DNA of 50,282 nt from Schmidtea nova. Lineage: Eukaryota. A program made the position numbers and the translations under genes. This document shows, one piece after another, positions 44,181 to 44,528 of this stretch. The DNA lies in assembly GCA_044892505.1 (NCBI GenBank), contig CM097883.1, positions 205,034,001 through 205,084,282 of the forward strand. The letters are read 5' to 3'. Within the stretch, counting starts at the first letter, position 1. Each line of letters opens with the position of its first letter. The notes beneath the pieces are model-generated. The model had not been told where the DNA came from and did no database searches. It saw nothing but the letters and a program-made list of their open reading frames with translations.

Positions 44181-44257
<77 letters not shown>

Positions 44258-44484
44258 ATTATTATCCATAATTCTCATAATGACTATAGATCAAAATTTT
44301 TTTTATAAATAATAACTCAATATTTCGGCACAGCCTTTATCAAGTGTGTATAATACAAACTTGATAAAGGCTGTGCCGAAATATTGTGTTATTGTTTATA
44401 AAAAAAATTTTTGATCTATAGTCATTATGAGAATTATTGATAATAATAATAAAAAAAGATCAAAGGGGAAAAAAGATAATTATG

Positions 44485-44528
<44 letters not shown>
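44181..44528. mobile_element. PLE family A palindrome embedded between two (TA)n tracts
   Basis: (TA)n 44181-44248, minus hammerhead 44315-44349, plus hammerhead 44355-44389, pLTR tail to 44487, (TA)n 44488-44528. Confidence 0.9.

What the first reader, a model, noticed from the sequence alone, without database searches (positions are those of the whole stretch)
44249..44490. Recurrent head-to-head twin-hammerhead palindromes as a mini-element class
Seen: at 6616-6811, 14262-14390, 24394-24552, 39500-39679 and 44249-44490 two family A pLTR ends are fused back to back. The turning point always lies at the 5' edge of or inside the hammerhead, and there is no ORF. The centres differ in each copy (gtgtatatacatac, gtgtgtatgaaa, tcaaatacacac, gtgtgtataatacaaac). 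Inference: they arose independently, so the hammerhead region is a hotspot for RT stalling and template switching. Alternatively they are a non-autonomous ribozyme-bearing unit. A transcript from either strand would contain one hammerhead paired with its own antisense, an auto-inhibited ribozyme and a long dsRNA hairpin.
Basis: partly seen in the sequence, partly recalled or inferred. Interest (0 to 1): 0.75.

Follow-up and report, generated by a model that had tools for sequence, protein, structure and literature searches.

The report
Twin back-to-back Penelope retrotransposon stubs
The palindromes are real, but they are the usual by-product of a very active Penelope-like retrotransposon, which copies itself from both cut DNA strands at once and leaves two short inverted end-pieces at thousands of sites; they are not a new kind of mobile element.

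Summary
All five loci are head-to-head pairs of the 3' end (pLTR) of one Penelope-like element (PLE). Its tandem unit is 2,767 bp and encodes RT plus GIY-YIG. The genome holds about 44,700 such ends. In an unbiased sample about 85% of them lie in short inverted pairs, which implies roughly 15,000-20,000 palindromes.

- **Turning points are not random.** About 68% of arms stop within 10 nt, at P397-404, the 5' edge of the hammerhead-like motif. A minor cluster starts at P435, one base past the predicted ribozyme cut.
- **Junctions differ from locus to locus.** They show 0-2 nt overlaps or 9-17 nt re-copied fillers.
- **Whole pairs are flanked by target-site duplications** of 10-12 bp.
- **Nearly every pair has one 'tailed' end and one 'untailed' end:** 57 of 58 short pairs, plus four long pairs read at both ends.

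Each palindrome is therefore an independent single insertion made by priming on both target strands. This matches published PLE structure and the in vitro behaviour of the PAc element. Three things are not supported: a self-copying palindromic mini-element, RT snap-back, and a validated hammerhead (Rfam finds none; helix II is only 3 bp). The cause of the P397 boundary is unresolved; I favour an RNA 5' end. The thing is a known kind, here in unusually high copy number.

The parts
44245..44351 (-). Left arm of the focal palindrome: family A pLTR P401 to about P495, untailed ('short') outer end abutting (TA)n
   Evidence: 92.6% identity to the reference copy; outer end reads ...GGATAATAATT followed by (TA)n
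44352..44487 (+). Right arm: family A pLTR P400 to about P535, with the roughly 40-bp tail (...AATAAAAAAAGATCAAAGGGGAAAAAAGATAATTATGATA)
   Evidence: 97.7% identity; tailed ('long') outer end followed by (TA)n
44343..44360 (.). Junction GTGTGTAT-A-ATACAAAC: one arm starts at P401, the other at P400
   Evidence: The same junction type occurs in at least 17 other loci, with the central A/T on either side of the tailed arm (9:8)
44182..44247 (.). (TA)n target microsatellite, left flank
44489..44528 (.). (TA)n target microsatellite, right flank
44356..44393 (+). Hammerhead-like block in the right arm (P404-441): helix I ACAC/GUGU, UUGAUAA(A), helix II GGC-UGU-GCC, GAAA, AUAU; predicted cut after P433. 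The mirror copy lies on the minus strand in the left arm
   Evidence: Sequence. Fits the min-HHR U3-A8 description of PMC4209133 except for a 3-bp helix II. No Rfam hit
6615..6801 (.). Twin insertion: arm P401-453 on the minus strand (about 6615-6666) and arm P401 to about P535 on the plus strand (6667-6801)
6604..6614 (.). Target-site duplication AAAAGAAGAGT, left copy
6802..6812 (.). Target-site duplication AAAAGAAGAGT, right copy
39498..39679 (.). Twin insertion: untailed minus arm (P409 to about P493, with an internal deletion) after (TA)n 39456-39499; plus arm from P399 running into an N run at 39680
24393..24552 (.). Twin insertion with unequal inner ends (P401 and P426), bounded by N runs on both sides
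14191..14410 (.). Old, diverged twin insertion of a related subfamily
   Evidence: 81-85% identity
23202..24226 (.). Longer twin insertion of subfamily A2: arms reach P300 and beyond, with a nested palindrome and (TA)n at the centre; left end untailed, right end tailed and running into N
49311..49875 (.). Unequal twin insertion: 60-bp tailed minus arm (P458-517, cut by N at 49310) joined to a plus arm of at least 460 bp that carries the GIY-YIG C-terminus and ends untailed in (TA)n

Best explanation
Each palindrome is the product of one insertion event of a young, very abundant endonuclease-bearing Penelope-like element.

Shown here or in the literature:
- The element's protein cuts both strands of an AT-rich or microsatellite target with a stagger of about 10-12 bp.
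- Each 3'-OH primes reverse transcription at one of the element's two internal initiation sites, about P495 and about P535. The roughly 40 bp between them is the known PLE 'tail'.
- One arm therefore carries the tail and the other does not.

Inferred:
- In most events both cDNAs reach only the discrete 5' boundary of the pLTR at P397-401. This is most likely a physical 5' end of the template RNA. It may lie near the start of the element's own mRNA, because the ORF start codon is at P475, inside the pLTR.
- The two like-sense cDNA ends are then joined head to head, by 0-2 nt AT/TA overlaps or by short template jumps, each serving as template for the other's second strand.

The result is a 180-270 bp ORF-less inverted pLTR pair. 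It is a dead-end by-product, not a replicating unit. Any transcript that reads through it would form a roughly 90-bp hairpin.
For: PLE identity:
- The tandem unit is 2,767 bp and carries an 865-aa ORF.
- Pfam finds RVT_1 at 31.9 bits and GIY-YIG at 26.5 bits.

Abundance and pairing:
- There are 44,671 copies of the 35-mer P458-492.
- In the first 100 hits on C1, 66 of 78 anchors sit in short minus/plus pairs.

Single events:
- Target-site duplications flank whole pairs: 11 bp in the window, and 12, 12 and 10 bp in L065, L067 and L075.

Two priming ends:
- 33 of 33 unbiased pairs have exactly one tailed and one untailed end. So do 24 of 25 further pairs and four long pairs read at both ends.

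Independent origins:
- Junctions differ from locus to locus. They show microhomology or fillers that re-copy the arm ends.

Two separate cDNAs:
- Inner ends of long pairs are unrelated, for example P298 versus P-1064 and P-2113 versus P-251.

Discrete boundary:
- 41,639 arms contain P404-437, but only 13,203 continue to P394.
- Unpaired arms share the boundary, and so does subfamily A2.

Independent data:
- Head-to-head joints appear in contigs of four separate DNA runs.

Literature:
- PAc cleaves and extends both strands and starts at two adjacent internal sites, and the tail is the sequence between them (PMC11167929).
- The arrangement of inverted pLTR, tail on one end and 9-10 bp TSD is described in PMC3846280 and PMC8557442.
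Against: - No RNA data were available, so neither the RNA 5' end at P397 nor any transcription is shown.
- In vitro, PAc showed no strand preference between its two start sites, so the strict one-tail rule is not explained by published data.
- The focal locus lies in (TA)n, so it has no readable target-site duplication.
- No read or contig spans the focal locus itself.
- Three arms that reached the next pLTR upstream passed P397 there without stopping. The sample is small.
- The sample requires an intact P458-482 anchor, so arms shorter than that are not counted.
Confidence: 0.8

Rival explanations
1. The single pLTR arm (P397-535, about 135 nt) is a SINE-like non-autonomous element. It would carry an internal promoter, be transcribed from existing arms, and be inserted in trans as a fresh twin each time. 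The class would then replicate, but the replicating unit would be the arm, not the palindrome.
For: - Arms outnumber longer copies by about 2:1.
- The 37-nt core just inside the boundary is identical in subfamily A2, although the flanks have diverged.
- PLE internal promoters in the 5' UTR are reported (cited in PMC8557442).
- RT initiation is internal, so read-through into the flank would not matter (PMC11167929).
Against: - Short arms and long copies show no diagnostic differences over P401-531.
- All 23 substitutions seen in paired arms are private, although the power of this test is low.
- No RNA evidence exists.
- The abundance is equally well explained by initiation at the 5'-proximal sites of full-length mRNA.
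Confidence: 0.2
2. RT snap-back or self-priming. A single cDNA stalls at the hammerhead, folds back or switches onto itself, and copies back, making the palindrome.
For: - Short pairs are nearly symmetric.
- Fillers re-copy arm ends.
- Some longer pairs are symmetric too: P333/P333 in L079 and P-321/P-321 in L106.
Against: - Most long pairs have very unequal arms.
- Unpaired arms end at the same boundary.
- The returning strand would have no reason to stop at the untailed initiation site, yet 57 of 58 short pairs have one tailed and one untailed end.
- A structural block should act at the 3' edge of the fold, not at its 5' edge.
Confidence: 0.12
3. The palindrome as a whole is a replicating mini-element, copied through a hairpin RNA or as DNA.
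For: All 40 scored genome hits to the focal palindrome are full length at 94-97% identity, and many share the centre GTGTGTAT-A-ATACACAC.
Against: - That set was selected for likeness to the query.
- In the unbiased sample that centre is 1 of about 33, and nearly all junctions differ.
- The central A/T is unlinked to the tailed side (9:8).
- Both outer ends are priming-type ends.
Confidence: 0.04
4. The palindromes are a MITE or foldback DNA transposon, or an assembly or amplification chimera.
For: The shape (terminal inverted repeats, TA-rich flanks) resembles a MITE. Several copies sit next to N runs.
Against: - The arms are identical to the 3' end of an RT and GIY-YIG element.
- The two outer ends are unequal.
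- TSDs are 10-12 bp, not a fixed TA.
- Joints are present in four independent short-read data sets.
- The regularities hold over tens of thousands of loci.
Confidence: 0.02

Closest known systems
Canonical PLE insertion architecture: inverted pLTR next to a direct pLTR, tail on one end, TSD (Arkhipova et al. 2013, PMC3846280; Craig et al. 2021, PMC8557442)
   Same: - Head-to-head inverted pLTRs with palindromic junctions.
- A 30-40 bp tail on only one end.
- TSDs of 8-12 bp.
- AT-rich or (TA)n targets.
- The first codons of the ORF lie inside the pLTR and tail.
   Different: - Here most insertions have no ORF body at all, only the two pLTR stubs.
- They number roughly 15,000-20,000.
- The one-tail rule and the 5' boundary are quantified here.
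PAc (Poseidon, Anolis) in vitro TPRT (Frangieh et al. 2024, PMC11167929)
   Same: - Both DNA strands are cleaved and extended.
- There are two adjacent internal RT start sites, and the tail is the sequence between them.
- ATT-type targets.
- The hammerhead lies 60-100 nt upstream of the start sites, near the ORF start.
   Different: - In vitro, neither strand preferred either start site. The genomic pairs here almost always use one of each.
- The steps that join the cDNAs were not reconstituted in vitro.
min-HHRs of PLEs, including the U3-A8 variant of Cercyon and 'dual min-HHRs 100-700 bp apart on opposite strands' in Schistosoma mansoni (Cervera and de la Pena 2014, PMC4209133)
   Same: - U3-A8 core.
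- Unpaired base before stem II.
- Helix I of 4-5 bp.
- No helix III, with a palindromic AUAU suited to dimer formation.
- Location in the pLTR.
- Motif pairs on opposite strands.
   Different: - Helix II is 3 bp here, against 7-8 bp in that description.
- The motif is not detected by Rfam models.
- That paper did not analyse the paired motifs further.
L1 twin priming (5' inversions); from my own knowledge of Ostertag and Kazazian 2001, not checked here
   Same: The second target strand also primes cDNA synthesis. The result is an inverted structure within a single TSD, with microhomology at the junction.
   Different: In L1 the second primer anneals anywhere inside the RNA, so the two segments cover different parts of the element. 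Here both arms start at fixed initiation sites and duplicate the same 3' region.
Non-LTR retrozymes (PMC7229834; bioRxiv 10.64898/2026.07.22.740005)
   Same: Short, ORF-less, hammerhead-bearing derivatives of PLE pLTRs, present in high copy number.
   Different: Retrozymes are direct tandem repeats that yield circular RNAs. These are inverted pairs, and there is no evidence that they replicate.

Membership tests
Penelope-like element (EN+) | Reverse transcriptase domain | tested here: met
   PF00078 at 31.9 bits (cut-off 29.6) in the 865-aa ORF of the 2,767-bp unit
Penelope-like element (EN+) | GIY-YIG endonuclease, C-terminal | tested here: met
   PF01541 at 26.5 bits (cut-off 22.6); the motif ...SCQKCDATYIGETHRTFRTRLNEH... 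is present; also coded at window 49430-49680
Penelope-like element (EN+) | Partial-tandem (pLTR) organisation | tested here: met
   Head-to-tail units with a 2,767-bp period; arms longer than one unit
Penelope-like element (EN+) | Adjacent inverted 5'-truncated copy, and a 30-40 bp tail at one end only | tested here: met
   57 of 58 short pairs and four long pairs have one tailed and one untailed end
Penelope-like element (EN+) | TSD and AT-rich or microsatellite targets | tested here: met
   TSDs of 10-12 bp; flanks are (AAT)n or (TA)n in most loci
Hammerhead ribozyme (type I, min-HHR of PLEs) | Catalytic core CUGANGA...GAAA, or the covarying U3-A8 form | tested here: inconclusive
   The sequence reads UUGAUAA+A ... 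GAAA, that is U3-A8 plus one unpaired A, as allowed in PMC4209133. The 37-nt block is identical in subfamily A2, so there is no covariation to test
Hammerhead ribozyme (type I, min-HHR of PLEs) | Helices I and II of the described sizes (I 4-5 bp, II 7-8 bp) | tested here: not met
   Helix I is 4 bp (ACAC/GUGU); helix II is only 3 bp (GGC/GCC, UGU loop); the fold z-score is -0.73
Hammerhead ribozyme (type I, min-HHR of PLEs) | Recognition by curated covariance models | tested here: not met
   No hammerhead family at E<=10 in the window or in a 71-nt scan. The whole-genome RF00163 search was uninformative
Hammerhead ribozyme (type I, min-HHR of PLEs) | Self-cleavage after H17 | not testable with these tools
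   The only hint is indirect: a minor cluster of arm starts begins sharply at P435, one base past the predicted cut at U433/G434
MITE / foldback DNA transposon | Equal terminal inverted repeats matching a transposase element, with a fixed short TSD | tested here: not met
   The outer ends are unequal (tail versus no tail), the arms are the 3' end of an RT element, and TSDs are 10-12 bp
Non-LTR retrozyme | Direct tandem repeats bounded by hammerhead cut sites | tested here: not met
   The arms are inverted and bounded by RT initiation sites

The most novel reading that the evidence does not exclude
The two sharp inner boundaries may be a genomic record of the 5' ends of this element's template RNAs in vivo. 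P397-401 would be the start of a short pLTR RNA or mRNA. P435 would be the product of self-cleavage by a U3-A8 minimal hammerhead. That would make these roughly 40,000 arms the first large natural read-out of PLE ribozyme activity. The strict one-tail rule would then indicate a dimeric enzyme that uses both initiation sites of one RNA in a single both-strand insertion. The palindromes would also supply hairpin RNA against the element's own 5' end.
Probability: 0.25. Interest if true: 0.65.

Novelty: new member of a known kind. Interest (0 to 1): 0.42.

Why it matters
How PLEs insert is still largely unknown. The only biochemical study (PAc, 2024) showed cleavage and extension of both strands and two internal start sites, but it could not follow the later steps.

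This genome holds tens of thousands of very young insertions, with arms differing by about 0.4%. Those insertions record the complete outcome:
- one tailed and one untailed end per event;
- a discrete 5' boundary;
- microhomology or re-copied fillers at the junction;
- target-site duplications of 10-12 bp.

That is useful natural evidence for a symmetric, two-strand insertion model. It also points to a defined RNA 5' end that can be tested directly.

For annotation, these palindromes should be masked as PLE fragments. They should not be called MITEs, microRNA precursors (they score against miRNA models below threshold) or a new element class.

Tried and rejected
- **Rfam at gathering and E<=10, whole window and a 71-nt slice.** No hammerhead was found. 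The palindromes hit only miRNA hairpin models, below their cut-offs.
- **RF00163 over the whole genome.** Uninformative: 73 of 106,045 candidates were scored, and the controls were silent.
- **A gapped genome pattern for the pair.** I replaced it with plain patterns and with fetching loci.
- **Relaxed-score BLAST mapping.** Swamped by AT-rich noise. I replaced it with stricter BLAST and an anchored extension script.
- **Shared-variant test between the two arms of a pair, and short-versus-long arm markers.** No signal; the family is too young for either test to have power.
- **Reads.** Only Logan contigs of four DNA runs were available, with no RNA run and no raw reads. RNA starts, small RNAs and editing could not be examined, and no contig bridges the (TA)n flanks of the focal locus.
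- **A 'trailing polymerase cannot overtake' prediction (the tailed arm never longer than the untailed arm).** Not borne out (L103, L091, L092).
- **Microsatellite strand versus side of the tail.** No relation.
- **No consensus sequence was built.** Natural copies (L024, L101) served as references.

Full report
**What is in the window**

The region 44245-44487 is an inverted repeat whose arms match each other and eleven other places in the window. Chance expectation for the arm motifs is about 0.01 matches.

The same sequence forms the 3' end of a longer copy at 49380-49875. Upstream of that end the longer copy codes for the C-terminus of a GIY-YIG endonuclease.

I used natural copies as references (L024 and L101). 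Positions are numbered so that P401 is the A of ATACACACTTG and the element ends at P531-535.

On that scale the five reported loci are pairs of arms facing head to head:
- The arms start at P399-409, or at P426 in one arm.
- They run outwards to the element's 3' end.
- The copy at 14191-14410 is an old relative at 81-85% identity.
- Three copies run into N runs, which I left alone.

**What the element is**

Genome searches show head-to-tail arrays with a 2,767-bp period. [quoted passage not shown] This is a canonical endonuclease-bearing Penelope-like element.

The ORF start codon lies at P475, inside the pLTR. The stop codon lies near P303 of the next unit. The 'end' of an insertion is therefore inside the 5' part of the ORF, as in the Anolis element PAc (PMC11167929).

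**Abundance and structure genome-wide**

A 35-mer from P458-492 occurs 44,671 times in the 1.25-Gb genome. I fetched the loci behind the first 100 hits on contig C1 as an unbiased sample.
- 66 of 78 anchors lie in short minus/plus pairs. That implies roughly 15,000-20,000 such palindromes.
- Adding bystander copies from other fetched loci gives 101 arms. Their inner ends fall at P397-402 (43), P403-414 (20), P415-430 (2), P431-442 (18), P443-458 (7) and further upstream (11).
- Independent pattern counts agree. 41,639 arms contain P404-437, but only 13,203 continue to P394. About 68% therefore stop within ten bases.

**Evidence for independent, single-event, two-primer origin**

- *Junctions differ.* Nearly every junction in the unbiased sample is different. 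Some show 0-2 nt AT/TA overlaps. Others carry 9-17 nt fillers that re-copy the last bases of an arm. The 40 best genome hits to the focal palindrome share its centre only because they were selected for likeness to it. Even there, the central A/T is unlinked to the tailed side (9:8).
- *Target-site duplications flank whole pairs.* AAAAGAAGAGT lies at 6604-6614 and 6802-6812 in the window. TSDs of 12, 12 and 10 bp flank L065, L067 and L075.
- *One tail per pair.* The outer ends come in two forms: untailed at about P490-499, and tailed at about P531-535. Pairs combine one of each in 33 of 33 unbiased cases, in 24 of 25 further cases, and in four long pairs read at both ends.
- *Long pairs are unequal.* Pairs with long arms have unrelated inner ends. 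This rules out a fold-back of one cDNA as the general mechanism.
- *Unpaired arms share the boundary.* Unpaired arms joined directly to microsatellite end at the same P397-401 (L094, L096, L100). So do arms of a diverged subfamily. The boundary is thus a property of the template or of cDNA synthesis, not of palindrome formation.
- *Independent read data.* Contigs from four independent DNA runs contain head-to-head joints. For example, 44349 joined to 44381 appears in all four runs at roughly single-copy depth. None bridges the (TA)n flanks of the focal locus.

**Fit to the literature**

- Arkhipova et al. 2013 (PMC3846280) describe a direct pLTR next to an inverted pLTR, a 31-bp tail on one of them, 8-10 bp TSDs, palindromes at the inverted junction, and the first ORF codons inside the pLTR.
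- Craig et al. 2021 (PMC8557442) describe the inverted 5'-truncated copy, the tail at one end and the (TA)n bias.
- Frangieh et al. 2024 (PMC11167929) showed that the PAc protein cleaves and extends both strands and initiates at two adjacent internal sites. The tail is the sequence between those sites.
- Cervera and de la Pena 2014 (PMC4209133) noted dual minimal hammerheads 100-700 bp apart on opposite strands in Schistosoma mansoni.

The palindromes here are this known architecture without the ORF body.

**The hammerhead**

The block P400-441 can be read as a minimal type I hammerhead:
- helix I ACAC/GUGU;
- core UUGAUAA plus one unpaired A;
- helix II GGC-UGU-GCC;
- GAAA, followed by a palindromic AUAU;
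- a predicted cut after U433.

Several features match the PLE min-HHR description: U3-A8, the unpaired base, the short helix I and the missing helix III (PMC4209133).

Against it:
- Helix II is 3 bp rather than 7-8 bp.
- The fold is not better than shuffled sequence.
- Rfam finds no hammerhead, even in a 71-nt scan.

The 37-nt block is identical in subfamily A2 while its flanks have diverged. It is therefore constrained, but that does not show what its function is. One hint of activity exists: the minor cluster of arm starts begins sharply at P435, one base beyond the predicted cut. I rate a working ribozyme at about even odds.

**What remains inferred**

*The P397 boundary.* I favour a physical RNA 5' end. 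The boundary is sharp and never passes A397 in the hotspot class. Its terminal bases are re-copied at junctions, and unpaired arms share it. A TATA-like TATTTAGG lies 27-31 nt upstream, which is weak evidence in a genome of about 75% A+T. The RT start sites lie within about 135 nt of that end. Initiation at the 5'-proximal copy of those sites on a full-length mRNA would therefore give exactly these stubs. RT stalling cannot be excluded.

*The one-tail rule.* It suggests that one RNA with two start sites is used once by each half of a dimeric enzyme. Published in vitro data neither show nor exclude this.

*Consequences.* A transcript across a pair folds into a near-perfect hairpin. No RNA data were available to test for small RNAs or editing.

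**Verdict**

They are ordinary PLE insertion products in an extreme, ORF-less and very abundant form. They are not a new element class, and the ribozyme label is unproven.

The scan's earlier notes on this window include a reading of the same U3-A8 motif and of a fold-back in another PLE family. I checked the first only in part and did not check the second.

Noticed in passing
window 24229-24392, 24553-24865, 39680-39815, 49018-49310: Three tailed ends of family A arms (at 24552, 39679 and 49311) break off inside the tail exactly where an N run begins. Their outer ends and targets therefore cannot be read. I did not try to fill the N runs.
   Followed up: no
window 12613-12740 and 17636-17705: Two further near-perfect palindromes (61-nt and 30-nt arms). 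They are probably head-to-head junctions of other PLE families in the window. The first scores 55.6 bits against a miRNA model, below its cut-off.
   Followed up: partly
window 11279-11305 (-): A canonical-looking hammerhead core, CTGAAGAG-GATTG...CAATC-GAAA, with a 5-bp helix II, in another PLE family. The pattern CTGANGA...GAAA occurs 10 times in the window against about 2 expected by chance.
   Followed up: partly
window 23202-24226; loci L109, L112-L114: Subfamily A2. Its flanks are about 84% identical to family A, but the 37-nt block AAATACACACTTGATAAAGGCTGTGCCGAAATATTGTG is identical. It forms head-to-head pairs with the same turning point.
   Followed up: partly
G000:C1:17163429-17188184 (L014, L015, L025-L030): An array of family A copies spaced about 1.7 kb apart, on both strands. 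It looks like a shortened derivative amplified in tandem.
   Followed up: no
L101 and unit coordinates P445-477 (window 49824-49856): Inside the pLTR, a TATAAAAA box is followed 17 nt later by TCATT, directly before the ORF start codon (P475). The tail codes for roughly residues 8-20 of the protein. Separately, a TAG at P396-398 sits directly before the arm boundary. This recalls the Drosophila virilis Penelope intron, which ends at helix I (PMC4209133).
   Followed up: no
G000:C1:5884604/5885381, 5886903/5887680, 8278718/8279495: Three minus/plus pairs of read-through arms with the identical 777-bp spacing. They may be a duplicated or re-copied longer twin structure.
   Followed up: no
window 23400-23625: The centre of the long A2 twin is itself a nested palindrome around a (TA)n run, suggesting a second event or microsatellite growth at the junction.
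   Followed up: no
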